DNA from: Bugula neritina
Lineage: Eukaryota; Animalia; Bryozoa
Assembly: GCA_964035545.1 (NCBI GenBank)
Contig: OZ037766.1
Span: 5,756,722-5,820,721 of the forward strand
DNA: 64,000 nt
Reading direction: 5' to 3'
The notes beneath the pieces are model-generated. The model saw nothing but the letters and a program-made list of their open reading frames with translations, searched no databases and was not told the origin of the DNA. The position numbers were made by a program, and so were the translations under genes. This document shows positions 33,901-61,114 of the stretch, piece by piece; within the stretch, counting starts at the first letter, position 1; every line of letters begins with the position of its first letter.

Positions 33901-36900
33901 GATTTAAATTTTAATAAAAGTTTTAATATTTTGAAGAAAGTAAAAAACCTGATTAATCAAGTTAATCGCTATTCTCGGCTTTCTGCTGCATTGAAACCTG
34001 CAATCAGTGAGACACTAAATAAGTTGATGAACTACGTCCAGAATGGCTTGAAGATCACAGACGTGGAGCAATCTGTCCAAGTTGGTAGGCATTGGTTTTG
34101 TTGCAGCTTTCTATGTTGGAAAGTTTTGTTGTTTCAATTGAAACCAAATATTTTAGTGAACAAGCTACCTATTATTATAAATCTCATCGTAATTCATTGC
34201 ATTTGCATTCTAACTTGAAAACCTGCTTAATTTTTTAATCCTATTATCAACTCATCTATTAATTGTTATATTTACAAAAAAAAATGGTTAAGTTATTATT
34301 TTGAGTAGAAATTTAACTCACATTTGAGCTGAGATAGAAAAAAGTCAACCGTGATGGTAATATTTGTTGCAGCGCAACTGATGATCTCAGCTAGTGGGAA
34401 TTGTCTCCCACTGTTGACATCAAAGCAATCGGAGATGATAAACAACCTAGAGTCTGTATCCCAGTCACTCATAGATGGGCCGAGGGGTACAAAGAAGCTA
34501 ATACAATACTTGATGGACCCGTTTGCTGGCTCAGCCATCACAGCAGTTGCTCCTCCAAATGTGGACAGCAAGAAATGGAAGGGTTAGTTGTTATTACTTA
34601 TATCAGAAGGCTTTTAGGAAGCAGCTGTGGTCTAGGGGTTAAAGTGTGGTCTAGGGGCTAGAGGGTTTGCCTAGGAAGCCAGAAGTCATTGGTTTAAACT
34701 CCGACAAAGGCCATTGGTGGTGTTAGGAATGGCATCCAGTCATAATTGCTCCTGTGCCTCATCTAAATAAGTTCTTAGCCTGATTTAACAAAAAAAACCT
34801 TTCCATCAGGAGTTTCTTACAGGGATGGTGACTCTAAACTTGCGTGAGTTGTTTTTTTGTCGGAAGTATTTTGCTCTACGGCATAGCTTATAGAATTAAT
34901 GCAATTTAGTTTAGTTGGTTAATGGACATAAAGGTAAATCTTTTTTTGTCAAACATTATTTTGCCTCTCACCTCAATTGCAGACAGTATAAAAGAGATTG
35001 AAACTGGCTGGTTTACATTCCTGTCTACTAATGGAATACAGTTTGGGAATCTTGTGTTGAGTCCATATCAAGTGTGTGATGGACCCAGTGGTGGCAACTG
35101 CACGGTAAGGCTTTCTACTAGAACTTAGAAAATATAAAAGATTTTGCTCTTTTCTGTTTAAACTATAATATTTTATTCACACATAACATTAAGCTGAAGT
35201 GTTTATATTGTAGTATTGTTTTACCAGATTCATATCAAAAGAAAAATTCTTTAACCTTTTTGGTAATTGTGTATATTTTATTTTCTGCTCTAATAGCAAA
35301 GCTTCAACAAACTGGTAAATTTTGGATGTGGATTTGCAAATGTAGAGTTGCCTCGTTCTTGACATAATAAGCTAATGTGGCTGTATAATTAATATAGTGC
35401 AATGTGGCATTGCAGCCCTATATATATAACCTATATAGCCCTAAATGTTTAGAAATGCAGTAATTTTCACCATCTTTTTATGCAAGAAAAATAATTAAAA
35501 TTTGTAAAGCAATTTTTTATTTCAAATTTTTCCAATGAAAAAAGACAACTCCAACTTTAAAGATTGTACTCTAGAAACACATTATCTTCACAAGAATTTA
35601 TATTTGAGTATAACAATGTTTTAGAGACTTTACTTTTACCGCGGCATGCAGATTAAAAACATTGAGCTATTATGATGTGCATGGTGTAGGGTAGCTCACA
35701 ACATTAATGCAGTATATTATGTATATTATAGTTGTCTACTAGGCACCAAGAATCAGTTGATTAAACTATGGAATATGTTCAAACAAGCGTTAATTTCAAA
35801 GCTTTGTTATAAATATATTGCATGTGTTCTATAGATGGTTGACATCAGCTTCATTGATTTAGTAAAGAGACCAGGAGACAATGATGCAAAGAAGGCAACC
35901 AGCACCTTCATTAGCGGTTTCAAGGCAGCATTTGAAGCTTTTGATTGGTCTATTTGTATGTAAATTACGTTATCCTATCTTTCACATAATTTTGAATAAC
36001 ATTGTTGATACTTTTGTACTCTGTACACTCCCATAACAGATGAATTAAAATACTAAATACATGCTTAAACTGCTTCAAAATTCTTTTGTTGACAATTTTA
36101 TGGAATTGTCTTGCATGCTTTTCATTAGGCCAAACACAGCTGCTATACATGTATGCTACCTGATTAAAATGCTAAGATAAATTTTGCTTGTTTGTCTATG
36201 AGTTATTAATGTTATTCCCCCTATTCACACTTACCGTACCGTACGCCGTAACAGCAAGTTTTAGCGATTTTTGTTAACATCCGGGATAAATCGTACTCCG
36301 GTATACGTTGCGGTGCTGATCAAGCAGTGCTTGATTCAAAAAATCACGGCGGGCTCCTATTGGGTAGAGTTGATGTGGTACTAAAATTTAAAGAACATTT
36401 TCGCTAGTTTATTTTAATCGCTTATTTTTGATTTAATTTAACCAATTCAAAAGTTTTAAAAGATTAAAAAATCTTTATCCGGCTTGTTTGAATTAAACTC
36501 AGCTTAAAAATCTAACTTTCCCTAATCACAAAATCGAGCAAACCAAAAACTTAAAACTGATTTGGACGGCTTAAATATTCATTATTTAAATTAGTTTGCA
36601 CAATTATTTTAAAAACGGATATCTTTAAAAGAAAGATTCTTTTCATGTTATTGCTTTTATAATTTAGTAAATAGCATTTATATAACATCTTTTGATAAGA
36701 ATGTTGCGAATAATTTGTAAATAATATTCAAAGGCGTTCAAATCACCGCAGACAAGAGTTGGCTTTATTATGATTGGTCACAGCTCAACGTCATGCATTT
36801 TACTTTTACGGCAATGTGTGAACACCCGTTGACAAAATGCAACAGCGTCGCCATTTTATTTTTGCTGTTACGGCGTACGATACGGTAAGTGTGAATGAGG

Positions 36901-37164
36901 GGATTATTCTATGCTGTATTCTTTTGTTTATTTGTTGTAGTTTACAGAAAACTTGACGAAATATCTCGGGATTTCCGATCTATTGAGCAGTACTTGGTGC
37001 AGGCAGGTCTCTCCTCTGCTGTCAATGTTAGAAAGCTACAGGCTCCTGTCACTGACTACAAATTCACTCGTTCATGCGTGACACAGTTGTCTGACCTCTT
37101 ACACCACGTCTGTTTCAGCAACTCTAAACCTGACGACAGCAAAGTCACCAAGATCACATGCTAA
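30933..37164 (+). CDS. Secreted protein with two WSC domains and an uncharacterised C-terminal helical domain, paralogue A (~617 aa)
   Basis: Twelve phase-consistent exons: 30933-30996 (signal peptide MYFSFQITFWVTALAVATLLK; start codon less certain), 31115-31287, 31386-31521, 32338-32495, 32662-32800, 32985-33191, 33499-33650, 33937-34084, 34373-34582, 34983-35104, 35835-35955, 36941-37164. WSC2 is the canonical 8-Cys type: VGCY..MSPNFCIKYC..GNTCSCG..CNKACAGSLGEKCGGDLANSVY. No TM segment seen. Confidence 0.85.
34618..34843 (+). mobile_element. tRNA-derived SINE, copy 1
   Basis: A-box-like TGGTCTAGGGG (locally duplicated), B-box-like GGTTTAAACTC, body AAAGGCCATTGGTGGTGTTAGGAATGGCATCCAGTCATAATTGCTCCTGTGCC. 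Clearly homologous to the reverse-strand copy at 42600-42805. Confidence 0.8.
36215..36903. mobile_element. ~690-bp non-autonomous TIR element (MITE), possibly PIF/Harbinger-type
   Basis: ~40-bp TIRs: left CCCCCTATTCACACTTACCGTACCGTACGCCGTAACAGCAA, reverse complement of right end CCCCTCATTCACACTTACCGTATCGTACGCCGTAACAGCAA. Candidate TTA target-site duplication at 36212-36214 and 36904-36906. No internal ORF. Confidence 0.85.
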
Positions 37165-38026: not shown

Positions 38027-41000
38027 ATGAAGTATGAAATGATTTGCTTCAGAATATTCTGTCTGCTCCTAGTGATCTGCGGCTCTAACTTGTTTACAGG
38101 TAAATACAGGTGGCATTAAAAAATGTATTAGAATTTAGGTTAGAAATGTTACTTTACGTTTCCAAATATATATTACAAGTGTTCACACATTATATATTTC
38201 AAGTTTCCACATATATGTGTTACAAGTTTCTATGTATATATTATAAGCCACCATTTTAATATGTGAGCATGTGATGCAATAGGAACAGCTGCCAGGACAT
38301 TCTCCGGCTGTTTCACAGTGAAAACCGGAGCCAATCCAATTGATATTGAAAATGCCGGATGGAGCGAATACAGTTTGTCTGAGCTTAGCATATCCAAGTG
38401 TGTGGAAATATGTGCCATCAGTTATAAGAAGTTTGCGGCTGTTACAACGGTACATTTACTTTCCCACTACATATTATCTAAGTTTCTCGATTAATTGATC
38501 AGTGTTCTGCAACTTTTAATATGCATGCAACATTTAATTTTAAAAAAAATAATAAAATGATCAGTTGCCATCACGTTTCAACATCTATCGCTATATCAGT
38601 GTAGATAAATAAATAGTCAGGTCTAAATTTTTTTCATATGTCAACACTTGCATACTACATGTATTTGCAAGTCTAGCTTTAGATTTACTACCCTTTATAT
38701 GTACTAAAAATCATTATTTTACTTTCTTGACTTCAGATGATATTTAGTTTTGTCACTTGTTGAATGGTTCAGGTAGACAATGAAATGGCTGCATGTCACT
38801 GTGGTACAGAACAAGCTTACACTAGACTGGGATCAGCTGACCATATTGACCCTCTCATTCCTTGTCACAATAGGGAATGGTCAATGGAAGTGTATCTTGC
38901 CACTGGTAGCTTAGAATTTTATCTATTTCTTTGCTAAAATTGTGCTAGAACTTATTCTAATTTATTATTAATATAACAATTATATTATGCTACAACGTAC
39001 TATATTATATAGCTAGAATGCATTAAGCCCGTGGTATTGCTTGTTTTATTTTTGAAATGTAAAATTATTTTCTTCAGAAAAATGTTTTCCTATTACCTTT
39101 AAAATTAATCAAGACAACTAAAATAGCATTATTATACCACAGTAAGAGCTTATTGATCCAATAGTAAAGCTGTATTTTTCTAATGCCTCTGTGACCAAAC
39201 TGACAAGCACCTGTGACACTTGCCTGCAGGTGATGTTAGTTCACAGTATGTCGGATGTTACAAGGAAGTGAATGACACGAGTAACATGGCTTCTTCCTCC
39301 AAAAACTGGATTGACAACTGGATAATGACTCCAGAAGAATGTGTCAGATACTGCAAGCAAAACCGAGAGTTTTTTGCTAATGTCAAGGTAAAATTGTTGT
39401 GAAGATACGTTGTCTAACAAAAATTTGATAGTTTTTAAAAATTCCATTGGCTTTCGAGTTGCCGTACCTTACAGAAGCTGATAATTATATTTGATACTCT
39501 AAACATATCCAGGGCTGCTGTGGCTTGCTGTGAATATATTATATTTAATTCTGTGAGCACATTACTATTAAATTTGAAGCCCTTAACTTTAGAATTGAAT
39601 ATCAAATGCCATCATATATTAAAATTGTTGTGCCTTAAACCAATCGCATAATAACTAAAAACATATATACTGCTTTTTATCTGCCACCATGGGTCTTGCA
39701 AACTAAAAATAGACTTAATTTTATCCTATATAACTTCATTCTATTATATAGTATTTTCATCAACCTAAATTTGCTGCTGCTTACATTCATGAGGATTTTT
39801 GGAATCAGTTCTTTAAAACCTGGCAAAACTACATAACCTACATACTATTATACCATGACTATTTAATATGGCTGTGTTAAATGGAGGTAAATCATTCATG
39901 CATTTGACTTAAAAAACAATTTCAAGAGATTTATGGTTAGCCGTGCAAAAATACCAGCACTGGATATACCATACATTGTAAACCCTGATGGACGCTTGCT
40001 TGCTCTCTAATTAATTTAAGTGATATGAAATGATTTTACAAAGTGATTAAGTTAAAAGCTCTAAAAAACTACAGTGTAAATAGATAGTTTCAATTGTAGC
40101 ACGGAGACGCATGTACATGTGGTATTAGCTTTGCCAAACATGGCAGGGTAGACAACTCTCAGTGTAACAAAGCATGTGCTGGAAGTCTTGGGGAAAAGTG
40201 TGGTGGAGATCTGGCTAATTCTGTGTACTTCACTTTGTGTGCGTAAATTTCAATAGCCAATAACAGTAAAGTATCATTCATTTTAGTTTTAGAATTTTGG
40301 CAATACAATATAAAATAAAATCAATGTAGGAAATTTATTTGGTCCAGTATTAGCCTAATTTAAAAACAATATAACTGCAGGTTATATCATGTTCTCAATT
40401 ATTGCATGAATTCATAAATGATGCTTTATTAAGTATAGTCCTATATATAATAAAAAATATTTTGCAATATCACTGTTTATTTGAAAAAGAATTAACTTAG
40501 CAGTTTCTACCTGATGAAACTCTAATTCATTGATTCAAAGGGAAAATATTGTATTATAAATCAATAAGATGCATGCTTCTAAGAACACTCATCAACGTAT
40601 TTCTTTTTAAACAACTTTTTCATTCGAAATTGTTTTCTTTTAAGATATTCCACACACAATTTGCTTTCAATTTCTATTGTAGCTCTGCAAGAAATGTTGA
40701 GAACTACATTTAACCCCACCATAATATTACGCTCTAATCCAGTAGCCAAAGTAGATGTCCCGTATACTCAGGCCTTCATCAATGACATCTACAATGTGAA
40801 ATCTTCTCTAAGTGCTAAGCTGCCAGTCCAAAATGTTCAAATTATTCTGAACCAGATGACCAATAGCATGAAGCTACTTCAGTCTGTAGCAGGTATGCTC
40901 TCCACGTCACTGTTACATAGATAGGCACGGGTATATTATTATGATACATTTAATATTATATGATACATATTCTACATATTATAATATATTTTTTTTATTT

Positions 41001-44000: not shown

Positions 44001-45195
44001 TAGCTAGTGCTGTCAGTGCTGTACCCCCAGACTGTGCCAATAGTAACAAAATATTCTGAATCCACTCTTGTAATTTCTTTTTGTAATTTCACTACAACTA
44101 AAACTTTGTTAAAGTCATAATGGTGCTGGACAACAATCATATGAATCATTGCAGACATCTGCAGAGGAGAGCTTTGCTAAAGCAGTGAATACAGTCAACC
44201 TCGCCAAATCGGACATGAGTAGATTTATCTCCGAGAATCATGTACTGTTCTCAGCTGTAGACTGGAATAGTTGTAAGTATTGGTACCCCTATTGTACCGG
44301 TAAACCTATTGATGTGTTTAGAAAGTCATCTATTCAACTTACTAAACTTTAAAGCACGCATCAGTACCTTTCTCTCACATTAATCTGTAGCAAGTCATGG
44401 CATTGGTAGAAATTTAACACATCATTTCAGAAGTAAAAAACTCAATTTAGTGATTATTGATGCAGTAAAATGTATTCTCTATGTACGCCAAATAAAGAAT
44501 CAGTAAGTGCGGTGCAGGTTACAGAGCAGCAAAGTAACAAGATAGATTATAGTTCCAGATCAGTTATCAGCTGCAACTGTTATTATACCTAGTACGTAGT
44601 TATCAATAGCTGATATACTCTTCTTTGTCATTCAATAAAAAAAATGCATTTTATCTATTTATATCCTTCAACAGAAGGAGCTCAAAATTTCAATAGATTT
44701 TTTTAAAAATATTTTTATGTAGATATAAAATAGTTTTCATACATGAAATAATACTATTACCAAGAAGTGCTTTGAATATAGTGCAATAATGCCTACTTGT
44801 GTTTGAAAATTAGTCCTGCATGTCTGTAAGAGTTCTTGTATATAATCTGAAATATTTTTGTTGCGTTGATTATTTTAAAATAACAGTTTTTGTCCTTGCA
44901 AATGTTACTTATGATCTTGATGAATTTTACAAACATGGCTGCAGTTTGACGTGATGCACCTTTCTATGCAGATAAAGCTAAGTTGGCAGAGATTAGTGAT
45001 GATTTTGACGCTGTTACAAATTATCTTCACACGACTGGCATCGCCACAGCTGATGATGTCTACAAGTTAACAGAATCTTTGACTAGTCTCCAATTCTACC
45101 AATCTTGTGTCTCCGAAATATCCACCATGGTGAAAAATGTCTGCTACAAAACATCATACCCTGACGAGCTAGAAGTTAAGCCTGTAACATGCTAG
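38027..45195 (+). CDS. Secreted protein with two WSC domains and an uncharacterised C-terminal helical domain, paralogue B
   Basis: Same 12-exon structure and intron phases as paralogue A: 38027-38099 (signal peptide MKYEMICFRIFCLLLVICGSNLFT), 38283-38449, 38773-38906, 39230-39387, 40100-40238, 40684-40892, 41324-41478, 41714-41861, 42330-42532, 42900-43012, 44155-44291, 44972-45195. WSC2: YVGCY..MTPEECVRYC..ACTCG..CNKACAGSLGEKCGG. Shared C-terminal motifs AQLMVSASRNCLPLL, GPHGT, KWK, and terminal VTC*. Confidence 0.85.
42600..42805 (-). mobile_element. tRNA-derived SINE, copy 2 (same family as 34618-34843)
   Basis: The reverse complement reads GGTGCAGCCGTAGTCTAGGGGTTAGAGC..GGTTTGAGCCC..AAAGGCCATTGGTGATGTTAGGAAGAGCATCCAGTCATAATTGCTCCTGTGCC..CTATAAACTTGC. 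Confidence 0.8.
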
Positions 45196-45875: not shown

Positions 45876-46052
45876 TGTTTTTCTGCATAAAAGTATAGTC
45901 CTGTTATAAACATATTATATATGACCTCATTTTTGACTTTATCATATTATTCCTTAAATTTATTCATTGCAATGAAAACAAAACACATATAACAAACACT
46001 AGTTAATGTAGTTTTGTAAAATTTATAATGAAGTAACAACATGAAATCCAAT

Positions 46053-49000
46053 TCATTGAGATGCAAGAGAATTGATTGAGAGTGATGAGCAGCTACTGCT
46101 AGACCCAAGGTGAAGGTCAGTCAAGTTGCTATCATCATGCATAGTGGTTTTCGCTGGCAAAATTGTCTCATAAGAATGTCCTTCTAATGGTAAAGCATTC
46201 ACTTCATTCCTAGGTTCCTGTGCATTCATGGATTGGGCTTGAATGTATGCAAAGCAGTGCAGATCATCTGTCAAACTCGCCTCATTCTGGGCGTTGCTCA
46301 ATGATTGTTGATCATGGTCTAAAATGTTTGTAAAACAAGCAAAATATTTATTTCATTTATTATAGCAGTATGCAGCTTTGTAAATTTCCCAATATAAATT
46401 CAATAAATTTTTCCCAAAAATTTTTAAAAAGAATTTGTGATCTTACCTGGTGTGTTTTTAATATTGCAGTTTTTTCTATTTTGGAACCATTTTCTTTTAT
46501 GAGCTATTAAAAGTGATAATACTGTGAGTGTTGTCAGAAGCACTAAAAGTGTGATCAGAATTGGCAAGAGCCACGAGTGAGTAGTTGGCAAAGACTCTTG
46601 TTTCACTGAAGTGTTTAGCACATCATCTGGATGCTTTTCATCGATGATTTTAGCACACAGAGGTTTGATTCCACACTGATTAGTTCCTTTATTTTTAGCT
46701 GAGTGCACCAATGACGGTTTTGATGGATAAATTGTATTGTCTCTTATATCGTACAGAGTTTCATATTTTGTGATATTTTCTTTTCTTGTGATGGTATATA
46801 CTGTGTAGTCTGGAGGCAGTTCTCCTGATCCGTTAAATGGTTGAATAGTATTATAAACACCGGTCATTGTTGAAGGTATTTTCGCTGCTTTTATTTCATC
46901 AAATAGTATTTTTCTACCACTGCTGGTGTGGAATAGCTGAGAACATTCGATATCGGTTGGTGTGAAGCACTGTTTTGCTTTTGCTACTCGGTAGCCATTG
47001 GCAAACAATAGACCGGCCAGAAGAATGTTTTTAACAACCTGATCGTCGTTGAAATTCAACACTTTTTGAGGCTGATTTGAGAAGTGATAGTTTGTGTCTT
47101 TTAAGCTTAATGAAGGATCACAGGGTTGTTGTTGAGGGTTCTGCTGGTGTGGAAGAAAGCATTCAAAACGATTTTGCCAGAACTTGATGAAGTAATAGTT
47201 TTTAGCATTATTTTTCGGATTTTGTAGTTCAACATAGTCTTGAAAATCATTAATGCCTTTCGAATTTAGATCAATGTAGTTATTGACATAGGTAACTGTC
47301 AAAGATCCAATTACCCCATCCTCTACTCCATTTATTATTTCTTGCATTGAACCCCAGCTTGCGCCTCCAACAAAAAAATGCCCATTCTGTTTCCAAGGCG
47401 AGTATAAAGACAGTTCTTGTAGGATCAGCCTTAACATTTGATGTTCTGCAATAATTACAAAAGGCTTAGGCAAACAATGCTTCGATTTGTCATCGTTTAA
47501 TTTATTTTTTATGTCTCTTGCCACTGTTACTCCTGAGGATTTCGTTAATCCTAAATTCTTGATATAAGAGACACAAATTCCTTTTTTCTGAGCATATCTT
47601 AGAATAGACTCTTTACTATCTTCACCATAAGCCGACTCCGTATAGAGTAGTCCTATAGTATCCCACCCATTTTTAATTAGAATGTCAATTATTACAATTG
47701 CATCATATTGAGTTGAAGGAGCGGTTTTAAGAAACATTGGGAATTGTGGAGAGTGTCTCACCCAGTCACTAGTGCCAGATTGAGAAATCTGAATTATTTT
47801 ATGAGGCTTTAAATAAGACTGTATTAGCATGGATCCATCAGCCGATCCATCCCCAATATAGACAGCAATATTTCTAACTGGCAGTTCATACTTCTTCCCC
47901 TGTGTGTCCACCAAACTCATCATGTTTTCATTCTTAAATAATTTGCTCATGGTTGATTGTATCCGAAAATGAGGATTGCATGTTTCAATAAAAAGAGTAC
48001 TGAAGTCAATGCCAGTGATGTTTCTCATCTTATTCACTATGTAGTAGAATGCCTCCATTCTTAAAAATCCAGTATTTGTAACTTGCTCACCGCAATGATG
48101 ATCTTCAAGTTGGTAATCTAGTTTATGTGAAAAAGCAATAATGTAGGAAGAATTATGTCTTTCAAAAATATACTGGGGGTATTTTTGGAAGCATTTAAAC
48201 CCACATGTTGACTTTTCTGTGCATCTCGATTTTATCTGATTACTTCTTAAAAATTGTGAACTCAACTCCCATGAACTGCTGTTAGAAAAGTATCCCACCA
48301 CATCAGAAGTAAAGTTATTCTTTACCTGATTGAGAGTGTATATTAAACCTGAAGAGTCACCTATATAGCCATCATCTAATTTTAATTTCGAAAGCCTGTT
48401 TTTTATTACGTCATTTATACTTGAGTATACAGTTTGTGTTTGCTTTATCTGGTCACATATGCCATCTGTGTCAGAACAAAGTTGTTGATAGGAAAACTTG
48501 AATGCTGCAGCATAAGTCAAGACAGCCTCCACCATGTTAGACGTGTAATCATCAGGAATATCGCAATATTCATTATGCTCACTCTCACACTCTAATTTAA
48601 ACTTTTCTATCATTTGAGTTACGTCTGCTGAACCATTGAGCTCTCCAGTCATCCGTGCATCAAAGTACTGCTTAAGCTCCACCTGCTTTGACTTATCAGA
48701 GAAATGAGACACTGTATACAGATTCAATTTATCTGAATTAGTTGAAGTGGCAAACAAATCGAGTAAATGTTCGGATATTCGGAGGGCATCAGAGGCCAGA
48801 ATAACTTTTACAGGGTTTGCTGTTCTCTTCTTTATCCGTTCCAAGTAGTGCTCTATTAGGTTGTTACCTGAAAAGTACAAACAATTAAAAAGTTGCCAAA
48901 ATTATAACCTTTAAACTTTAAAAAAGCTAACTAGCTAATTTGAGTCTATATTTATCTCAAAAGAAAACTATTTTTCCATTTTTTTGCCACTTAAACAAAG

Positions 49001-52000
49001 ATGTAAATTAACAAGATTAAAATACAATACTTGTACTTAGCATTATAAGAAGCTGTAAAATTTTTATTCTCTACTTATAATAGCCATTTCAAAACATAAG
49101 CAACACGAATATGACAGAGCAGGACCAAAGTAATGACAAGCAAGGTCAGCTGCTAATCAAGTCAAGTACCAGTCCTATGGCAACAAAATTTCATGCAAAA
49201 TTGCCTATAGCTCAACATGTGTAACAGGATAAAAATAGATTGGTTAGATTAAACAAGCTTATTATAAACCAAATATGTACAAAAACTTTTTGAGTAGATA
49301 GACAAAAGTCAACTAACTCTCACCAGCATCGTTCTGGCCAAAGTAGATAGTAGCATTTGTTTCGTCTGTAATCATCTCATAGGTTACGTGTCTAAAATGT
49401 GCCCCTAAATTTTCTGGAGAGACTTTCACTTTTAATACTTTTGAAATACAGACTCCTCTAGCCTCAGCATAGTCTTGTACAGATTGAGCTCCAGCTACGC
49501 CATAGTCATCATCTGTGTGCACCAATGAAATGTAAGTCCATTCCATCTTCAACACCATCTCAATGAGTGCCTGGAAAGTTAAAGAAAACAGTTTTGCACT
49601 TTTCATTTTAATTTTAACCCAAATACCTAAAGTCTATCGTGTATAATATGTTTTGTGGTGAGCTCATGTATAAAAGTTGCAATACTAAAAATATAATATG
49701 TTAACGCCAATATAGTTCAATGCATACAATAAATCCATGCAAAAATATTATATACCATAAACTTTTCCGAGGCACAAATTAAGTTGGAAATAAAACTTGT
49801 GTGGCCAGCCCAAGTTGGGAGTACTTTAAGTTAGAAAGGTGCGAGTATCTGAAAGTATACTGTCACTTAGAAACAAATTCTCAAAGCTTAGAGAAATGTT
49901 GCACCATCAGTTTTGTGGAAATTACGGTTATTGAATTTGGTTTAGGGTATCTATGTTCATTAGACAACACAGTGTTGCAGGTTATACTAAGACACCGATA
50001 AGTAATTCAATTCAATATGGTGCTGGCTCCAGTTACTTTAATCTTAAGCTTTGGTTTAGAATTTACTTAAAGAAATGCTGCTTTATACAGCTAGGTTATA
50101 TAATAGGCAGTTGTTAAGTTTTAGAAAAACTAATTTGGCCTTGAAAAGTTTCACTAGTGAAACAGGGCTGTTTTTTTTCTAAAATGACTAGACTAGAAAG
50201 ATGAACATTAAAAACAGAGTAAGTGCATCATCACCAATTAAATAAAGCAATTAATTTATATTTGAACGCATATACTACATTATTTATATACCTGGTTTAA
50301 CCTTGTTGTAAATAAACATCTCATAAAAGTATTTATAATAACGCAATGGCCTTTCAAGTGGCAATTAATTTGGTGCTGTCTCATACCAAAATGCAAATTT
50401 CACAACACTATTTTACACTTTATGTTTATAGATTGTAGAACGATTTTTATACTCATTTTCACTGCTTATAGTTTGCAGCTTTACCTTTGCCTGCAAGAGG
50501 TCAGATGGAATAGTTCTCCATAGTGTTCCATATCTAGTCCTATCGGACAATTCAGCTAGTGTAGCAGTCGGTGTGACTATTGGTACATCCATATGGTGGA
50601 GAAATGCAGCTGTTTCACGAGTGTTGGAGCTATACAGAGTGCCAACAAATCCTAGAATAATAGAACATCATGCAACAAGTGCCAGATCTACATATGAGAC
50701 TTCATTTCTATTGTACAAATGTTTGCCTGTGTATTCTACCTATAGCCAAACAATAGCCAAAGCCATTGGATTACAACAATTGGCAGTTTAGCTTTAATGG
50801 CTTAAGGTCATTTGCAGTAAATCTTGGAAAACAGTCTCCAATACTCCACTACCCACCCAGACATAAGAAAGGATAGATGTTTAAATTTTTCAGCAATTTC
50901 GAACTTATTGAACTAGCATAAAAAGCCTGCGATTTCTAATTACTTCAAACTGCTTTTGATTTAGAGTGAGGACCTGCCTATACATTTAATTGGGTACCAG
51001 AAGTTGTCTCCTAACATGTTACATCACACTCTCTAATGCTATTGATGACTGTAGTTATCACGGTAAAGATAGATTAGCAGTGACATGGACTCACCCAGGT
51101 TGATAAACTGATCTGCTACTGAGCAAGTTGTAGCTGGCACAATCCATGTTTCTTTCCTTATTTTTGAGGCAGCCGACCAAACTCCCATACTTCTATTATT
51201 GCATATCTCTTCCACATTGAGCTCTACAGTGTGAAGAGGGAAAGTTTGTATAGCAATTGTTGTTGGTATTATGTTTTGTGACCTTTCAGTGACTAATATT
51301 CAGTTATTGCCTTGAACTACACAACCCCCTCCCTTCTGCATATGAACTCAATACCATATATTGAATATATTTCCTTGTTTTTCTCCTATTCTGAAACTGG
51401 GTAGTCTATCAACTAGCAGATTTAAAAGTATCTTCCACTTACATTCTAGTTTACCTAACTTTCATTATTTATTTGTTAGGGCTTATTTTATAAATTTCAT
51501 AAACTTTATTGCTATGGGTGAAAGAAAAAGAATTTCTGCTAAAAAGACTTTGAGTTTACTAAATAATTAAGGTTTTTGAACAGCAAAAACTAAAATTTAA
51601 AAAAAAATATTTCAATCAAAATTTGTCACTTTATTGTGCATCAGCCACATATGAACAGTTTTAAAAATATCTGGTTGAGCTAAAATTTTTATCAATAAAC
51701 TTATAAAAACACTTCTTTAAAATTGGCAACATGCTACTCAGAGCTTCCTGCCCTACCAACCATTACACGGACACACCTGGGTTAAAAACAACTTATTTCT
51801 ATAACTAAAAATATAAAGCATTGAGATTATTTACAGTGAAAACTATAAAAGTTTGCATATTAATTAAATAGTCTCAAAGGCTGTTTATGTTTTATATTTT
51901 TATATAAAATCAGTTAATTGTTTATTTTTCAACTCAGAATATAGGTGACTCATTAATATACTTGAAAAGTTCAAAAAACTATTTTAAAATTTTTTTTAAC

Positions 52001-52425
52001 ATGCTTGAAGCTGTAAATTCTGAAACTTTTAAATAATACTTAATATGTAATTTACCATAGTCTATCTCAGCAACTTTGAATTCAGAGTGATTTCTATTTG
52101 CTATACCAACAGCATACTCAGCAGCTAGCGCCATTGACAGCGTCAAAGCTGAGGGGGGCTGAGACGGTCTGCAAGTATCCAGCTCTGATACCTCCAGCAG
52201 TGCTGTAATGTGCACTTTACTTATCCTTCCTCCTAACAAAAAGAGTACCAATTTCAAATAAATAATTTTAAGAAACAATTTTCAACAAGACAGCTCAACT
52301 CAATACTAGTTACTACACTTATATAAATTATTTATAAACTTGCCTACTTCACCAGTGCATTGTTGAAAACTTTCAAATACTTGTAGTTGTAGTAGAAAAA
52401 GCAAGAACTCCGCAATGTGTCCCAT
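46053..52425 (-). CDS. Type I single-pass membrane receptor with two tandem mGluR-like Venus flytrap (ANF_receptor) domains and a non-catalytic cytoplasmic tail (~1162 aa)
   Basis: Exons 52425-52344 (signal peptide; GC donor), 52232-52056, 51223-51095, 50651-50485, 49570-49324, 48867-46447 and 46318-46053 join in frame (3489 nt). VFT1: GFVGTLYSS..TPTATLAELSDRTRYGTLWRTIPSD..MEWTYISLVHTDDDYG..GVCI..LASD. VFT2: GFLRMEAFYYIV..IETC..YIGDGS..IIQISQSGTS..FPMFLKTAPS..GWDTIGLLYTESAYG..GICVS..KFWQNRFEC. One TM segment, WLLPILITLLVLLTTLTVLSLLIA, followed by HKRK. Confidence 0.85.
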
Positions 52426-53081
52426 AACTTGTCTATAGCTCTGTACCATTACATAATATATAATATTATTTACAATTTCAAGATTTCTGCACCATTTACT
52501 GGACTATACCTTGTAAACTGCTGATTGGTTACAGTATTTAGCTTTCTATTGGACCATCAAGTAGAAGTGGTTATATTATTATCGAATCAAATTAAATCTG
52601 ATATAAGCTAGATTTGTATCACCAGGGTAGAGGAAATGCTTCATTATCCACCGCCTTATAATGATTGATGTACTTTAATACAAGCATATAAGTCTTGTTG
52701 AAATGTATAAACATGCCAGAAGTGTTATAATGCTACATTCTATTACATATACAGTAATAAGGAAATGGATGATTAGTATTTGTATGTGTCAGTGATTTAG
52801 TTTTATTGATTGTTTGGCAAAAGTTCAGGCCAAAAATATTGACTATAATAAAGCTTCAAGGAAACAGTTTTTGGGTGACACCAGCTAGTCTTTATTCGAG
52901 TTACTGCAGAATACTTATAGATTTTATGACTAATGCATCGATTTGGCCAGCAATTATTATATTATTATATTCTTGCGTTACTGCAATTTTATGTATAAAA
53001 CCCACTTCCATAGAATAAAGGTTTCCGCACTTTTGGAGCTTCCTTCATTACACACAGTGATGTTTTGGCAATTTGAGAAGT

Positions 53082-55332: not shown

Positions 55333-58300
55333 ATGTCTGTAAAAGGAGAAGCTAAATCAGCAGCAGGTAAAACTGAGCACACAATGAACACAGCTGCACG
55401 TTCCTCTCAGGTACTTTTTCATGTTACTATGTAGAGTTCTAGTAGAATAGCTGTAGTATATAACATATTATGTATTAATAAGTATATAGGTAGTTAATAG
55501 ACTTTAGCTCGTAGCTCCTTGGTAGGCCCTGTAGAATCTAATATAAGCATATATGCTGTGCATGGCTTTTTGAAATGTGCTCTTGCTGTGGTATGATTTA
55601 AACATGCTTGTATCTGCCACATAATTTTAATAGTTTGGATGAAATCATAGAAAAACAGCAGCTGTGGTTTGCAGTGCACAGTCTAGCATCCCTGCTTCTA
55701 ACCCAATATTCCTTGTAGTTATCCAGAACCTTGACTAGATTAGGACTATAGTGCATTCTACATGTGAACAAATTTCTTACAGCAATTCTGATATGCATGC
55801 ATTGTAGCATTTGCATGAGGAACGTCTTGCGCAGGAAGTACTTGCCGTGTGGCGAGACAATTTCGACCCTTCTCCGAATTCCGCCTCTCATTGGCGGAAG
55901 AAAGCTGCGGTGAATCAGGAGTGCACAGTGGTACACCCAAATGCACGACATGTATTTCACTTTATCCCACTGCACTTTGCTAGCACTTACAAATCTTCTG
56001 GAGTTATCTTGTCTCAAAATTTAGCACCAAAGAGTAATGCAGTACTCCATATGACATCGCCTGACACACTTCATATGCAGTATTGAAATATTCATATACG
56101 AGTATATCAATCTTAGCTATCAGAGAGTTGTGTACTTAAGCCATTTTGTTTTAAAATGAATTTTTCGTAATCATGTCTTGGATTGATTTGGAATTTTTGA
56201 TTGCCTGCTGATGGCGTTTTCAGTTGGCTCTAGAGTCTGAAATATATTTATAAAAGTAATAGTAATTACTGCTGACCTTTATTGCATGCTGCTCTTAGCT
56301 GCTGCCACACACAGCTTAATCACTGAACTGGCTTAAAAGTTTAAACTTTTGAACTCACTAAATGATGTATGTCACGAATTCTTGAAGTCAAATTGATTAC
56401 CAACTGGTCTTGCTAAAACTTTCTAGCTAATTTTTGTTTCATAAACAAGAATAAACTCCAGAAGTATGCCTGAGTGATAAAACACTGTCACATTTTCTCT
56501 CCGCAAATACTTTAACAAATTCTTGCTTTAAGTTTCCTAAAGAAATAAAATAGAAATTTCCTTTCTTGAGTGAGCCACTTTATATAGATTGTGCAATGCT
56601 AGCTAACTACTAAATCAATATTTAAAAAAAAAATATTTTGATATAGTTGTGAAATATTTTACTGCATTTCACATTTACAGGTCTACACAATGTCATAATA
56701 TTCTCACATTATACTTCAAATGTGGATTTCTAGATCGTTCTGCTGCTAAATACTTAATTCTGCCTTTTCAAATGTCCTAGAGTGCATCTAACTCTAATTT
56801 ATGTGAAAAAAATATAAAGTGCAAGCATCAAAATTTTAGAGCGAAATAACTGTCACATAAACTTGCTCAGCAGCAAAAAATAACATCTTGTGCTATTCTC
56901 CTCACCTCACATATCTCAGCTCTGTCCTGTTTGGGTAACTGGAATAACATCTTCTGCTATAACTAATCCACAATCTAATCAATGCTTACAATTTCTCAAT
57001 GCATTTTCACTATTTTATGACATCAGACTTGCAAACCAATTTCTTTATCAACTGCTTATTTACAATTTGCTACAGCAACCTTAACACAATAAATGCAACG
57101 TATGTCCTCTTAGATTTGTATTAAGAAAACAGTTGTATTAGTACTTTTATCACATTCTAACTCAATGCAAGCTTTAACTCATAACTGACTATCGATGTGA
57201 TGTATATTACATAACAATATTGACTAGTTATCACCTATTGCTGTGTTATGGACAATTAAAGCTCAATATTTTGTAATAGGTTTTAAAAAGTGACACTCAT
57301 AGAAGACTACGCAGATTGATAAACTCTGAAGGTGTAACATTTTTCAAGAGTCAAGAATACACAATAATATTCAATTTCTGCAAATAAGCAGTATTTTATA
57401 ATTTAGTATTTGCTATACATTGGCCACAAGCTGCAACCACAGTGATAAGTAAAGTCTGCCTTTTTAAAATTAAATTACTAGCATTTGGCCAGTGTACTCT
57501 GTTAGGAGTTATGTCTGCTTGAAGCTATGTGGAAGGGACGAAAGCTATCAAAGCAGTGCATAAATTTATAGTCAGATTTTAAAATGAGTCCTTGGCTCTA
57601 AACATCATCCCAAAACTTCAGCAGCTATATAATCTTCGTAGAAACAAGTGGAGGTTGATCCATTTGACTGCACCTGTGGACCATGCAAACGGTTTTGGAA
57701 AGAAAATTTCACCAACACGACTATACTCAGTGAACCAGTGATAAAACGTGCTCAGAAAACATCCACAATGTTTCGTCCTGACCAAGCAGACTGGAGGGTG
57801 AGAGTTGGTGACAGGGTCATCGTCAATGGCAGACATACAGGTGAGAAATCAGGTATTGATTGTCTTTATCAGCAGTAAATAGTATGACATTCATTTAAAG
57901 GTCTTTTGACATATATTAATTATCTTGAGCTTTTCATGTTCCGTTCAGCATTAAATAATGTGTACTGTAAAATGAATTCTACAAAATGGAATATGCAAAG
58001 TTAAGATACTAACCAACACCTATATGGCTACAATCTATGATGATCTTCTTTAGTACAGAACTCATTATACAAATATCCTTGCTTCTTTAATAATAAAAAA
58101 GTGATAAGTGTTAAAATATGCAAAAGACGAAATCTTCTGTGGAAAGCTTACATTTTAGAACTGAAAACAGGAAATATATTTAAGAACATGTGAGGTTATT
58201 CTAAAATCACGTTGGTGAATATTTAATTAGCTTAATTGTTTTGGTCTCCGCATATGACGTTTAATGTTATGTTGTAAGAGCCCAGTCTTATGAATACTAT

Positions 58301-61114
58301 ATTATGATGCAGTGATTAAATGCATACTTTAAGAAGCATATCATATTTTTTGTAGGTGAAGTAAGATTTGTTGGTCTACTAGATGAAAATGTTATAGCTC
58401 CAACGGTGTACGTAGGAGTGAAGTGTGATGAGAACTGTAAGTAAACTCTATTGTTACATGGTAGCTTTCTAGACACGATGTATATACGTGTTGACATTGA
58501 ACACTGAATACATAAGCATCTCAAGATGAAAGGTAGAATAACACTAATTCTAAAGAAACTTTATAAAAAAATTGACCGACAATGAAATTAAGCAATCACA
58601 TTCTAAGCCAAACCAAAGATTAAAAACTCAAGCTAAAAAATTTACATGTTAAGACAAAAGCATGCGTTGACTGAAGCAGTGATAGCAGGTGACCTTGTGC
58701 ATAGTTTGACAATCTTCAGGGCATGAGGACAAATTTTTAGGCTTGAAGCATTTGTTAAAACTAAATCGCTTCTTGTATAAAAAATCTTCAAGCCTGCTTA
58801 TTATTCATGTGGATATATAGCGAACAAATGAAGAAAACTGAGTATTTATATGACAAAACTATAAAAACGAAAGCCAGTACCAAAGGATATTTACATATTG
58901 TTGACACTCATTGTGTAATAATTTCTAGTGGGTTCCACACATAATGGGGTTATGAATGGCAAACGTTACTTTCATTGCCCAAGAGGCCATGCTGCCCTAG
59001 TTCCTTATACGGATGTGAGACGGCTGAATCCTGCAGAAGTAAGACCTCCACTCACGGGGAACTTCATGTTTGACAGCTACTATGATGTAGTCAAAACTCG
59101 AGCTTTGAGAAGGCAGAAAATGGAGTAAGTAATCAACTGTAGACATAATCAATTTGAAAGAAATTTTCTCAACTGCAGTTATTGTTTAATATATTTATGT
59201 TTAGCTAGAAGTTGTTAATTGGAGCATGATTTTGTAGAGCAAGCGAAGAAGCAACTAGACCAAAACCGGTAAAACCACCATCACGAATACGAAAAACTTA
59301 CACTGTTTCGGATGAGAATGACGTAGCATATAAAGTATGTAGTTCTCCCATCTAGATTTATTGTATAAATTTAAATATGCAAATGCGAAAATTATGAAAA
59401 TAATAACACAAAATGCTACTCACTAATAATTGATATACATGTATAGTTCTAGTCACTATTTTGGCTAGTCTACAGATTGATATGACATGATTATATCCGA
59501 TTTTTTGCTATCAAAACATGTAATTTCAGTCCAGAAACTAGTTTATGTCACAAAATACATTGCAGGACATGATAAAAAAGCTGACAAAAGAGGTATATTT
59601 CTCCTTTCTTGTTTTATGTTGTCACATTTTATTTATCTGTTTGCTTCAATATAAGTACTAGTAGTTGTAAATGGACTTTAGAACTATATAATTAACTACA
59701 AATGACTGTTACTTTCAAGAATTAAACAAAAATTGTATTCTTATCTAGAGATCCAACGCCTGTAGTTATTTGCTGAATATGAAAATGATCTACAGTTTAG
59801 TTAAGAAAGTAGACAATATTTATTGTTGCTAAAATTACATTCAATCATTTTCAGACAAATTCCTCGACACACCTGTTTTAATTCTGCCAGGTTGAAATTG
59901 TACAAATAGTTACAATTGTTATATTAAATTCTTAATGGAACCAGGTGCATAATGCAAATTTTAGCATCTGTCAACTTTAACTTAATATCAACCCCACAGA
60001 GATATTCACTGCTTCATTTTAAACTATTGGCGCTACAATTCACTAGATGTTATAACTATAATTATACTTTCTTTTTTCTTCATTCCCTGCTAACATATTT
60101 TATGATTCACCATAAATAAGTTTTGTATGTTTGATCAAACTTTTAATAACGTTTATTCTTTCTTATTTCACCTAACTAATTATGTTTTGTGATGAACCCA
60201 GACATTGCTTACTCCACCTTTTACCTTACCTACAACCAATTATATGTTTATTATTAAACTGATAAGCAGCTGAAGAAACATATTATGTGAACAACTTGAG
60301 TTGGACGCTTAAACACACCAGAAACTTGATGTGTACAGCAAGCATTGAATATTTTCTGATCACTGCCAATTTATAGCAGAGGACTGAATGCTGTTATGTT
60401 GATAATACCACTAATAATTAGTTTCTCACTTTAAACCAGGATTCGCAGAGAGAAGGAGGCACCCAAGTGTATCACTATGCTAACAGTACTGTCAAGGTGA
60501 GAACAGGTGGGCCTCCGAAGGCAAAGGTTGATCCTCAGGCTAGGAGATTTGTTAAATGGAAGGAAGAATTTGGGGGTGGAGAAAAAGGAGATAGATTAGT
60601 TAAAACCCTCAAAAAACTACACGAAGGTAAATGATTATATAATATCTTTATATACTAAGTCAAATTAGAATTTCTGCAACTTTAACAGAAATAACTTATT
60701 TTTTTTGTTTATTAGTAAATAAAAACAAAGTACTACATTGATCAAGAAAACTACAAAATTTACAGCAAATAATTTATCTCCGAGTTTACATTTACACCAA
60801 TTGATAGAAAATGTGATCTTTAAAGTTGATGTACTTTAAAAAACCATATTCACTAACAGGGCTAATTTCACCTAAAGATATTAGTAGAACTATATGTTTA
60901 TTGTCTGTTAGCATTAAACAAAGGAAAGGAGTTGGAGAATGAAGAAACTGAGGAAGAGGAAGAACTATCAGATGAATATGACGAGGATCAATTAACCGAC
61001 AGACCGCCTACACAACATAGCAGTAAATCTCCCACTAGAGTAGGGGACACTTCCACTTCGCAACCTTCTAGACAGCCTAGCCCAATGAAGAGTGTGCAGG
61101 GGAACCCTGGTTAA
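55333..61114 (+). CDS. CAP-Gly domain-containing protein (uncharacterised, probably ciliary/microtubule-associated)
   Basis: Exons approx. 55333-55410, 55808-55930, 57642-57840, 58356-58436, 58929-59125, 59238-59334, 59566-59592, 60440-60626 and 60912-61114 join in frame. CAP-Gly pattern: VGDRVIVNGRHTGEVRFVG..YVGVKCDENLGSTHNGVMNGKRYFHCPRGHAALVP. Acidic, Ser/Pro-rich tail. The 5' exons are less certain. Confidence 0.8.

What the first reader, a model, noticed from the sequence alone, without database searches (positions are those of the whole stretch)
46053..52425. Single-pass receptor with two tandem Venus flytrap domains and no signalling enzyme or 7TM
Seen: seven in-frame exons give signal peptide - VFT1 - VFT2 - one TM - ~105-aa low-complexity tail ending at TGA 46055-46053. 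Only ~860 bp remain before the convergent WSC gene stop, so there is no room for a 7TM, kinase or cyclase domain. Established: class C GPCRs have one VFT plus a 7TM (mGluRs via a 9-Cys domain), Venus kinase receptors have one VFT plus a Tyr kinase, and natriuretic peptide receptors have one such domain with or without a cyclase (NPR-C lacks it). Inference: this double mGluR-type VFT, catalytically empty architecture fits none of these. It could be an amino-acid sensor acting through adaptors, a co-receptor, or a decoy/clearance receptor of an undescribed invertebrate family.
Basis: partly seen in the sequence, partly recalled or inferred. Interest (0 to 1): 0.85.

Follow-up and report, generated by a model that had tools for sequence, protein, structure and literature searches.

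The report
Double Venus-flytrap single-pass receptor gene
This bryozoan (Bugula neritina) gene encodes a membrane protein with two glutamate-receptor-type ligand-binding "flytrap" domains on a single membrane helix and no signalling enzyme, and it belongs to a conserved family in molluscs, brachiopods and bryozoans that I found described in no paper.

Summary
Seven GT-AG exons on the minus strand (52425-46053) give a 1159-aa protein: signal peptide, two mGluR-type Venus flytrap (VFT) domains, one TM helix and a 107-aa tail. No 7TM, kinase or cyclase is in the gene, in the window, or (for 7tm_3) within megabases.

The gene is under purifying selection. Against a sibling-lineage copy, dN/dS is 0.16 and all exons are indel-free while the introns are full of indels.

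It is not a one-off. B. neritina has at least 16 paralogues, and the scan flagged the same design at 7 or more other places in this genome. The same architecture occurs in Watersipora, Lingula and many molluscs, always labelled "uncharacterized" or mis-named mGluR.

A domain tree shows VFT1 is the counterpart of repeat 1, and VFT2 of repeats 2-4, of 3-5-VFT class C GPCRs. Those GPCRs were also absent from the papers I searched.

In this paralogue VFT1 keeps all five alpha-amino-acid pocket residues, while VFT2 has lost three.

Caveats: no RNA evidence could be obtained, and the donor of the tail exon is AT rather than GT in the sibling lineage.

Verdict: a real gene, a new variant of a known kind. 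The function is inferred: a small-molecule sensor or co-receptor.

The parts
52353..52425 (-). Exon 1: ATG at 52425 (G at -3, G at +4) and the signal-peptide-like segment (aa 1-23). A second in-frame ATG at 52449 has a weaker context.
   Evidence: both ATGs are conserved in the sibling contig L007
52056..52232 (-). Exon 2: start of VFT1 (lobe 1 N-terminus)
   Evidence: gap-free and 95% identical in L007
51095..51223 (-). Exon 3: VFT1
50485..50651 (-). Exon 4: VFT1 pocket residues S134, T157 and D177 (equivalents of mGluR1 S165, T188, D208)
   Evidence: Pfam ANF_receptor E 2.6e-6; gapless alignment to mGluR3 chains
49324..49570 (-). Exon 5: VFT1, including Y205 (equivalent of mGluR1 Y236)
   Evidence: Pfam E 3.9e-8; gapless alignment to mGluR5
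46447..48867 (-). Exon 6 (2421 nt): C-terminal half of VFT1 (D291), Cys-containing linker (C480, C486, C490), all of VFT2, stalk, TM helix and the first 19 tail residues
46739..48073 (-). VFT2 (aa 530-974). Pocket positions read A607, T630, T650, Y678, A767, so 3 of the 5 signature residues are lost.
46505..46573 (-). Single transmembrane helix (aa ~1030-1052)
   Evidence: hydropathy; AF2 helix at residues 771-803 of the large-exon model
46445..46446 (-). Intron 6 donor: GT here, AT in both sibling-lineage contigs
46053..46318 (-). Exon 7 (predicted): 88 codons of Ser-rich tail with YETIL (aa 1121-1125), ending in TGA at 46055-46053
   Evidence: The frame is open and indel-free in the sibling. 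dN/dS is 0.45 on 11 changes, which is inconclusive.
45959..45964 (-). AATAAA, the likely poly(A) signal, about 90 nt after the stop

Best explanation
This is a real, selectively maintained gene of the bryozoan Bugula neritina. It encodes a type I single-pass membrane protein whose ectodomain is two stacked mGluR-type Venus flytrap modules.

It belongs to a conserved lophotrochozoan family with the layout signal peptide, VFT1, Cys linker, VFT2, one TM helix, and a non-catalytic, fast-evolving tail. That family is the sister architecture of multi-VFT class C GPCRs.

The mechanism below is inferred. The membrane-distal VFT1 keeps the five residues that hold the alpha-amino and alpha-carboxyl groups of amino-acid ligands in mGluRs, so it probably binds an amino-acid-like small molecule. 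It is not necessarily glutamate, because the Arg78 position looks unconserved by eye and this was not computed. By analogy with mGluR and NPR dimers, VFT1 closing on its ligand would change the geometry of a VFT dimer. In this paralogue VFT2 has lost 3 of 5 pocket residues but is still under purifying selection, so it would act as a relay or spacer module. The change would pass through the single helix to partner proteins or short linear motifs in the tail: a YxxPhi motif here, and a conserved C-terminal -ISRV class I PDZ ligand in molluscan members. No enzyme or G-protein-coupling domain belongs to the protein itself.
For: Gene model. Seven GT-AG exons give 1159 aa with one TM segment.

Selection. 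The comparison is with sibling-lineage contigs L007/L008. There are 0 gap columns in 3480 exon nt against hundreds in the introns. The stop codon is the same. dN/dS is 0.163 overall, 0.17 for VFT1 and 0.13 for VFT2.

Fold. Pfam ANF_receptor hits. Best solved relatives are mGluR5/3/1 at E 1e-22. The AF2 model matched by Foldseek gives TM-score up to 0.87.

Nothing further downstream. No 7tm_3 within megabases. The other minus-strand ORFs in the window belong to unrelated genes. The independent assembly L007 is collinear through 45049.

Family.
- 15 of 15 tested homologues have 2 ANF_receptor domains, 1 TM and no other Pfam domain.
- They come from Watersipora, Lingula, Haliotis, Pecten, Aplysia, Lymnaea and others.
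- An mRNA-sized Logan contig carries an uninterrupted 1099-aa ORF of the same design.
- B. neritina has at least 16 paralogues, each with one TM after VFT2.

Tree. All VFT1s group with repeat 1 of the multi-VFT GPCRs (SH-aLRT 99). All VFT2s group with repeats 2-4 (SH-aLRT 95).

Pocket. VFT1 reads S134, T157, D177, Y205, D291, all kept. VFT2 reads A, T, T, Y, A. Both sets are identical in the sibling.

Tail. 17 of 30 family members end in [ST]-x-[VIL], mostly -ISRV, against 3% expected.
Against:
- No full-length spliced product of this gene turned up in the protein collections.
- The intron-6 donor is AT in the sibling lineage, so the tail exon may be dispensable or not spliced there. Read-through would end the protein 7 codons later.
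- The tail shows no similarity to any other family member and lacks the PDZ ligand.
- The ligand, dimerisation and partners are all inferred, not shown.
- The residues that read the glutamate side chain do not appear to be conserved.
- The VFT2 pocket is degenerate in this paralogue.
Confidence: 0.45

Rival explanations
1. Auxiliary or heteromeric subunit. The protein does not signal by itself. Through its VFTs it pairs with 7TM class C GPCRs or with paralogues, as GABA-B2 and T1R3 do, and tunes their ligand range or trafficking.
For: - The VFT2 pocket is degenerate yet constrained, as in non-binding partner subunits.
- There are many paralogues in tandem arrays, plus 7TM class C genes in the same genome.
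- The VFTs are homologous to those of the multi-VFT GPCRs.
- Class C VFTs are obligate dimers (established knowledge).
Against: - No partner is identified and there is no linkage to a 7TM gene.
- VFT1 looks ligand-competent.
- Molluscan members carry their own PDZ ligand, which suggests autonomous scaffolding.
Confidence: 0.2
2. Clearance, decoy or uptake receptor in the manner of NPR-C. It binds a small ligand and removes or buffers it by endocytosis, without transmitting a signal.
For: - The architecture is catalytically empty with a short tail.
- A YETIL (YxxPhi-type) motif is conserved in the sibling.
- Precedents exist: NPR-C, and the 7TM-less glutamate-binding SmGBP on the schistosome surface (PMC3206071).
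Against: - The tail exon may not be spliced in the sibling lineage.
- The VFT here is mGluR-type, not NPR-type.
- Two stacked VFTs and at least 16 diverged paralogues are more than simple buffering would need.
Confidence: 0.12
3. Adhesion or synaptic-organiser type molecule. Its VFTs bind proteins rather than small molecules, and its tail docks to scaffolds.
For: - A conserved -ISRV PDZ ligand in the molluscan subfamily.
- VFT-like amino-terminal domains of iGluRs mediate protein contacts (established knowledge).
Against: - The window protein and the Watersipora protein have no PDZ ligand.
- VFT1 keeps the small-molecule pocket motif.
Confidence: 0.08
4. Incomplete gene model or decaying gene. 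Further exons (7TM or kinase) are missed, or the locus is a pseudogene fragment.
For: - No RNA data.
- The donor of intron 6 is mutated in the sibling.
- The VFT2 pocket is degenerate.
Against: - dN/dS is 0.16 with zero exon indels.
- There is a stop codon, an AATAAA and a convergent neighbour 858 bp away.
- No 7tm_3 within megabases.
- The downstream ORFs belong to other genes.
- Full-length homologues in many species, including an mRNA-sized contig, end the same way.
Confidence: 0.04

Closest known systems
Uncharacterised double-ANF_receptor single-pass proteins of Lophotrochozoa (e.g. Watersipora subatra XP_067948068.1, Lingula anatina XP_013389729.2 and XP_013382567.1, Pecten maximus XP_033746774.1, Aplysia californica XP_005105500.2)
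   Same: The layout is the same: signal peptide, VFT1, Cys linker, VFT2, one TM at about aa 1020-1070, and a tail with no Pfam domain. VFT1 and VFT2 each fall in the same clade as the corresponding domains of these proteins.
   Different: Identity is only 17-30%. The window protein lacks the -ISRV PDZ ligand of the molluscan subfamily and has a degenerate VFT2 pocket. None of these proteins has a described function.
Multi-VFT class C GPCR-like proteins (Tubulanus XP_074641006.1, Sinanodonta KAL3856574.1, Saccoglossus XP_002735016.2, Branchiostoma XP_035691717.1, Octopus XP_052832771.1)
   Same: The window's VFT1 groups with their repeat 1, and its VFT2 with their repeats 2-4. All are mGluR-type VFTs.
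   Different: They carry 3-5 VFTs, a distinct membrane-proximal VFT and a 7TM domain. The window protein has 2 VFTs and one helix.
Metabotropic glutamate receptors (class C GPCR)
   Same: The VFT fold and sequence are closest to mGluR5/3/1. VFT1 keeps the S/T/D/Y/D amino-acid motif.
   Different: There is no 9-Cys NCD3G domain and no 7tm_3, and there are two VFTs instead of one.
SmGBP, the truncated mGluR of Schistosoma mansoni (PMC3206071)
   Same: Both are 7TM-less mGluR-type VFT proteins of a lophotrochozoan. SmGBP is membrane-associated, surface-exposed and binds glutamate.
   Different: SmGBP has one VFT (488 aa), no C-terminal TM helix and no tail. Its sequence relationship to this family was not tested here.
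NPR-C (natriuretic peptide clearance receptor)
   Same: It has an ANF_receptor-type ectodomain, one TM helix and a short non-catalytic tail.
   Different: It has one VFT, of the NPR type, which binds peptides. No NPR chain is among the 60 best solved relatives listed.
Venus kinase receptors; bacterial BvgS/EvgS
   Same: VKR is a VFT on a single helix that is activated by amino acids (PMC2680970, abstract). BvgS has two VFTs in tandem (PMC4352136, abstract).
   Different: VKR has one VFT and a tyrosine kinase. BvgS is a bacterial histidine sensor kinase, whose VFTs are, from my own knowledge and not tested here, of a different periplasmic-binding-protein class.

Membership tests
Class C (glutamate-family) GPCR | ANF_receptor-type Venus flytrap ectodomain | tested here: met
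   Pfam E 6e-23; PDB mGluR E 1e-22; Foldseek TM-score up to 0.87
Class C (glutamate-family) GPCR | Nine-cysteine NCD3G domain between the VFT and the membrane | tested here: not met
   No PF07562 hit. The stalk has only two Cys (C996, C1002), and the inter-VFT linker only C480, C486 and C490.
Class C (glutamate-family) GPCR | 7tm_3 heptahelical domain | tested here: not met
   One hydrophobic segment only. No PF00003 hit in the gene. The nearest 7tm_3 matches on this chromosome are at 2.77 and 17.3 Mb, against the gene at 5.80 Mb.
Venus kinase receptor | Intracellular tyrosine kinase domain | tested here: not met
   The tail is 107 aa with no Pfam hit.
NPR-C / natriuretic peptide receptor | A single NPR-type ANF_receptor domain | tested here: not met
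   There are two VFTs. The closest solved relatives are mGluR, CaSR and T1R, not NPR.
NPR-C / natriuretic peptide receptor | One TM helix and a short non-catalytic tail | tested here: met
Lophotrochozoan double-VFT single-pass family (undescribed; defined here) | Signal peptide, two ANF_receptor domains, one TM near aa 1020-1070, no other Pfam domain | tested here: met
   Window model; 15 of 15 homologues
Lophotrochozoan double-VFT single-pass family (undescribed; defined here) | VFT1 and VFT2 each fall in the family's VFT1 and VFT2 clades | tested here: met
   VFT1 clade SH-aLRT 99, VFT2 clade 95, bryozoan sub-clade 100 (quick IQ-TREE search, no bootstraps)
Lophotrochozoan double-VFT single-pass family (undescribed; defined here) | C-terminal class I PDZ ligand (-ISRV), a feature of the molluscan subfamily | tested here: not met
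   The window protein ends in -SLASQ and the Watersipora protein in -PEKIE. This is a subfamily trait, not a trait of the whole family.
Amino-acid-binding VFT (mGluR-type pocket) | Equivalents of S165, T188, D208, Y236 and D318 of mGluR1 | tested here: inconclusive
   VFT1 keeps 5 of 5 (S134, T157, D177, Y205, D291). VFT2 keeps 2 of 5. Binding itself cannot be tested with these tools.
SmGBP-type truncated mGluR | A single VFT without a C-terminal membrane helix | tested here: not met
   The window protein has two VFTs and a C-terminal TM helix, against the description in PMC3206071.

The most novel reading that the evidence does not exclude
The double-VFT single-pass proteins are a third, undescribed way of using class C flytrap modules, next to 7TM coupling and kinase/cyclase coupling. 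They would form a lophotrochozoan-wide family of small-molecule (amino-acid-like) sensors that signal through scaffold docking or partner receptors. In bryozoans the family would have expanded into a tandem-array chemoreceptor repertoire, for example for larval settlement or food cues. It would derive from, or be ancestral to, multi-VFT class C GPCRs.
Probability: 0.3. Interest if true: 0.8.

Novelty: new variant of a known kind. Interest (0 to 1): 0.6.

Why it matters
Venus flytrap modules are known to signal through a 7TM bundle (class C GPCRs), a kinase (VKR) or a cyclase (NPR-A/B).

This is a conserved family with two stacked mGluR-type flytraps on one helix and no catalytic or G-protein-coupling part. 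It is under purifying selection and has expanded to at least 16 genes in a bryozoan. That raises the question of how flytrap closure is read out without any of these effectors.

It also ties in multi-VFT class C GPCRs, which I found described in no paper. Both families offer natural test cases for how tandem flytraps cooperate.

The molluscan members are already mis-annotated as mGluR5 or mGluR6/7/8, so a proper family definition would also improve annotation.

Tried and rejected

2. Joined sequences. Following the operators' note, I sent neither the spliced 1159-aa protein nor any exon-junction string to any remote search or fold tool. Remote searches were done exon by exon, by reference. The joined model was used only inside local scripts. 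A junction-pattern scan of metagenome or transcript collections was therefore left out.

3. The first word-indexed homologue search found only 2 hits. The exhaustive HMMER search was needed.

4. Tail homology. Local blastp and tblastn of the tail against family tails and paralogue loci gave nothing significant.

5. A shared intron position after the TM helix in paralogues L002 and L003. No GT[AG]AG donor was found, only plausible downstream tail-like open frames. Inconclusive.

6. The 733-bp length difference in intron 4 as a transposon. Rejected: the stretch is single-copy in the genome and has no terminal inverted repeats.

7. Hidden 7TM, kinase or cyclase exons. Rejected.

8. Pseudogene. 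Rejected on dN/dS and the indel pattern.

9. Literature. Seven full-text searches found no description of eukaryotic double- or multi-VFT receptors (one search was for the organism). Subscription-only papers are not covered.
Full report
**What is there**

On the minus strand, seven exons are all flanked by GT-AG: 52425-52353, 52232-52056, 51223-51095, 50651-50485, 49570-49324, 48867-46447 and 46318-46053. Together they make a 3480-nt reading frame of 1159 codons with no internal stop.
- The ATG at 52425 has G at -3 and +4. A second in-frame ATG at 52449 has a weaker context. Both are conserved in a sibling lineage.
- Hydropathy gives a signal-like N-terminus and exactly one TM segment (aa ~1030-1052). 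A 107-aa Ser-rich tail follows.
- The stop at 46055-46053 is followed by AATAAA at 45964-45959.
- The last ORF of the convergent neighbour ends at 45195, which is 858 bp away. That neighbour has a WSC-domain exon at 39220-39402.
- Upstream there is about 5 kb without convincing coding ORFs, then a plus-strand gene with a CAP-Gly domain.

**Domains**

All remote searches were done exon by exon, by reference.
- Pfam ANF_receptor hits the large exon (E 6e-23, profile positions 13-254). It also hits exon 4 and exon 5 independently (profile positions 73-127 and 108-158). So a first VFT is split over exons 2-6, and a second lies wholly in exon 6.
- No NCD3G, 7tm_3, kinase or cyclase model hits any exon.
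- A local HMM built from family VFT2 sequences finds two domains in the joined model: aa 89-432 (93 bits) and aa 530-974.
- The closest solved relatives of VFT2 are mGluR5/3/1 (E 1e-22), then CaSR and T1R2.
- Exons 4 and 5 alone align without gaps to mGluR3 and mGluR5.
- An AF2 model of the large exon has mean pLDDT 74.5, about 85-90 over VFT2, and a TM helix at residues 771-803. It matches mGluR VFT crystal structures at Foldseek E 1e-28, with TM-score by target up to 0.87.
- An AF2 model of the closest full-length homologue available by reference (Watersipora P0003:1-1100) shows, by secondary structure and pLDDT, two well-predicted alpha/beta regions and one long helix. I did not run a fold search on that model.

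**Organism**

The genome handle has 216,009,554 bases. The Darwin Tree of Life assembly of Bugula neritina is given as 216.00 Mb (PMC11480708). An earlier agent's note names the same species.

**Is it a live gene?**

Two JGI metagenome contigs (L007, L008) carry a copy that is 93% identical at the protein level. They are most likely host DNA in B. neritina metagenomes and come from a sibling lineage.
- The contigs are collinear with the window from 53200 to 45049, so there is no assembly break at the 3' end.
- All seven exons align without a single gap, and the stop codon is the same. The introns carry hundreds of gap columns, including about 730 bp in intron 4.
- dN/dS is 0.163 over the whole CDS (dS 0.17; 115 synonymous and 76 non-synonymous changes). 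It is 0.17 for VFT1 and 0.13 for VFT2.
- This rejects a pseudogene.
- The tail is less clear. Exon 7 has dN/dS 0.45 on only 11 changes. The intron-6 donor is AT rather than GT in both sibling contigs. If it is unspliced there, the protein would end 7 codons after the exon, with a tail of about 26 aa. Either way the product is single-pass with no effector domain.

**No hidden effector**

- A whole-genome 7tm_3 scan scored all 22 candidates. The nearest on this chromosome are at 2.77 and 17.3 Mb, while the gene is at 5.80 Mb.
- The larger minus-strand ORFs further downstream in the window belong to unrelated genes, with rabenosyn-type NPF and VPS11 hits.

**A family, not a one-off**

- Within B. 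neritina, a profile of the large exon finds at least 16 loci: C1 2.64 Mb (2 copies), this gene, C3 3.65 Mb, C5 2.02-2.06 Mb (5), C5 1.52-1.54 Mb (2), C5 5.38 Mb, C2 15.67-15.70 Mb (3) and C4 10.95 Mb. Each has a single hydrophobic helix right after VFT2.
- First-stage readers of this scan had flagged the same design at 7 or more other places in this genome.
- An exhaustive HMMER search of 1.84 billion representatives gave 1050 hits. About twenty of the top 150 are 1100-1750-aa proteins with two VFT matches and one TM near residue 1020-1070.
- 15 of the 15 scanned have two ANF_receptor domains and no other Pfam domain.
- These proteins come from Watersipora (Bryozoa) and Lingula (Brachiopoda). 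They also come from Haliotis, Batillaria, Bulinus, Patella, Aplysia, Lymnaea, Pecten, Solemya, Sinanodonta, Potamilus and Saccostrea, and from Argopecten, Ylistrum, Mizuhopecten and Pinctada.
- All are named "uncharacterized" or "hypothetical". The exceptions are an automatic "Metabotropic glutamate receptor 5" in Mizuhopecten and an ESM Atlas cluster auto-named "Metabotropic glutamate receptor 6/7/8".
- One member (P0056) sits as an uninterrupted 1099-aa ORF on a 3671-nt Logan contig with short flanks. This looks like an mRNA, so the architecture is not an artefact of genome annotation.

**Relationship to 7TM receptors**

The same search found 1800-2900-aa proteins with 3-5 VFTs followed by a 7TM bundle. 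They occur in a nemertean, a bivalve, an octopus, a hemichordate and amphioxus. The Polypterus "CASR" giants look like fused tandem gene models.

I built a maximum-likelihood tree of 86 VFT domains (quick IQ-TREE, SH-aLRT only).
- Every VFT1 of the single-pass family falls with repeat 1 of the multi-VFT GPCRs (support 99).
- Every VFT2 falls with repeats 2-4 (support 95).
- The membrane-proximal repeat 5 and the ordinary single-VFT class C receptors lie elsewhere.
- The window's domains fall in bryozoan sub-clades (support 100).

So the VFT1/VFT2 duplication predates the family, and the single-pass and multi-VFT 7TM proteins are sister architectures. Which of them is ancestral is not resolved, because the tree is unrooted.

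**Pocket**

The residues were mapped by direct alignment to solved mGluRs and by MAFFT.
- The window's VFT1 has S134, T157, D177, Y205 and D291. These are all five equivalents of mGluR1 S165, T188, D208, Y236 and D318, which hold the alpha-amino-acid moiety.
- The family's VFT2 consensus is S, T/S, D, Y, E.
- The window's VFT2 is A607, T630, T650, Y678, A767. That is three losses, seen in no other bryozoan paralogue examined, and they are identical in the sibling lineage.
- The position of the glutamate side-chain ligand Arg78 does not look conserved. That judgement is by eye from the family consensus, not from a computation.

Inference: VFT1 is the ligand-competent module for an amino-acid-like molecule, and VFT2 of this paralogue has changed or lost its ligand.

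**Tail**

- Tails are 48-674 aa long, hold no Pfam domain and cannot be aligned between members.
- 17 of 30 members end in [ST]-x-[VIL], mostly -(E/K)(K/R)ISRV, against 3% expected. The members are related, so this measures conservation and is not a count of independent events.
- This is a class I PDZ-ligand pattern, restricted to molluscs.
- The window protein ends in -SLASQ and has only a YETIL (YxxPhi) motif, which is conserved in the sibling.

**Mechanism (inferred)**

By analogy with mGluR and NPR dimers, ligand closure of VFT1 would reorient a VFT dimer. The change would pass through VFT2 and the helix to partners or to linear motifs in the tail.

The rival readings are an auxiliary subunit of class C receptors or paralogues, an NPR-C-like clearance receptor, and an adhesion or scaffold molecule.

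The nearest described precedent is SmGBP. It is a 7TM-less, surface-exposed, glutamate-binding single-VFT protein of Schistosoma (PMC3206071).

**Novelty**

Seven full-text searches found no description of eukaryotic double-VFT single-pass receptors or of multi-VFT class C receptors. The library lacks most subscription journals, so this absence is not proof.

I rate the finding as a new variant of a known kind. It uses known modules in a conserved arrangement that no paper I found describes. Its members are already in databases without a name.

**Not done**

- There are no bootstraps or AU tests on the tree.
- There was no sequence comparison with SmGBP, VKR or NPR, because none was available by reference.

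Noticed in passing
window 46445-46446 versus L007 and L008: The donor of intron 6 is GT in the window but AT in both sibling-lineage metagenome contigs. The tail exon nevertheless stays open and indel-free there. This may be a lineage-specific loss of the long tail.
   Followed up: partly
proteins P0010, P0012, P0015, P0016, P0018, P0020, P0021, P0026, P0037, P0041, P0043: These are predicted class C GPCRs with 3-5 tandem VFT domains before the 7TM. They occur in a nemertean, a bivalve, an octopus, a hemichordate and amphioxus. Their repeats 1, 2-4 and 5 form separate clades. I found no paper describing them.
   Followed up: partly
C-termini of molluscan family members (P0032, P0038, P0050, P0055, P0057, P0078, P0178-P0184): They share a conserved C-terminal -(E/K)(K/R)ISRV, a class I PDZ-ligand pattern, at the end of tails that are otherwise unalignable.
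   Followed up: partly
window 49571-50484 (intron 4): This intron is about 730 bp longer than in the sibling contigs. The extra DNA is single-copy in the genome and has no terminal inverted repeats, so it is a plain indel rather than a transposon.
   Followed up: yes
window 52452-52457: A minimal uORF (ATG TAA) lies just upstream of the two candidate start codons and is conserved in the sibling contig.
   Followed up: no
window 36895-37164 and 44983-45195 (+): The last ORFs of the two tandem WSC-domain genes end in similar Cys-containing C-termini (...KITC* and ...KPVTC*). This belongs to another first-reader note (s1-472651).
   Followed up: no
window 57648-59128 (+); 21722-22675 (+); 16269-16601 (+); 6593-6868 (-); 2728-3300 (-): The neighbouring genes are a CAP-Gly domain gene, a BRCT-domain exon, an SNF2-related exon, a VPS11-like exon and a rabenosyn-type NPF exon. 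All are ordinary housekeeping-type genes.
   Followed up: partly
L006 (ENA metagenome contig ERZ27296354): A 30%-identical VFT2+TM large exon (P0002) lies on an 18.6-kb marine metagenome contig next to an RVT_1 fragment. It is probably host DNA of another bryozoan-like animal.
   Followed up: no
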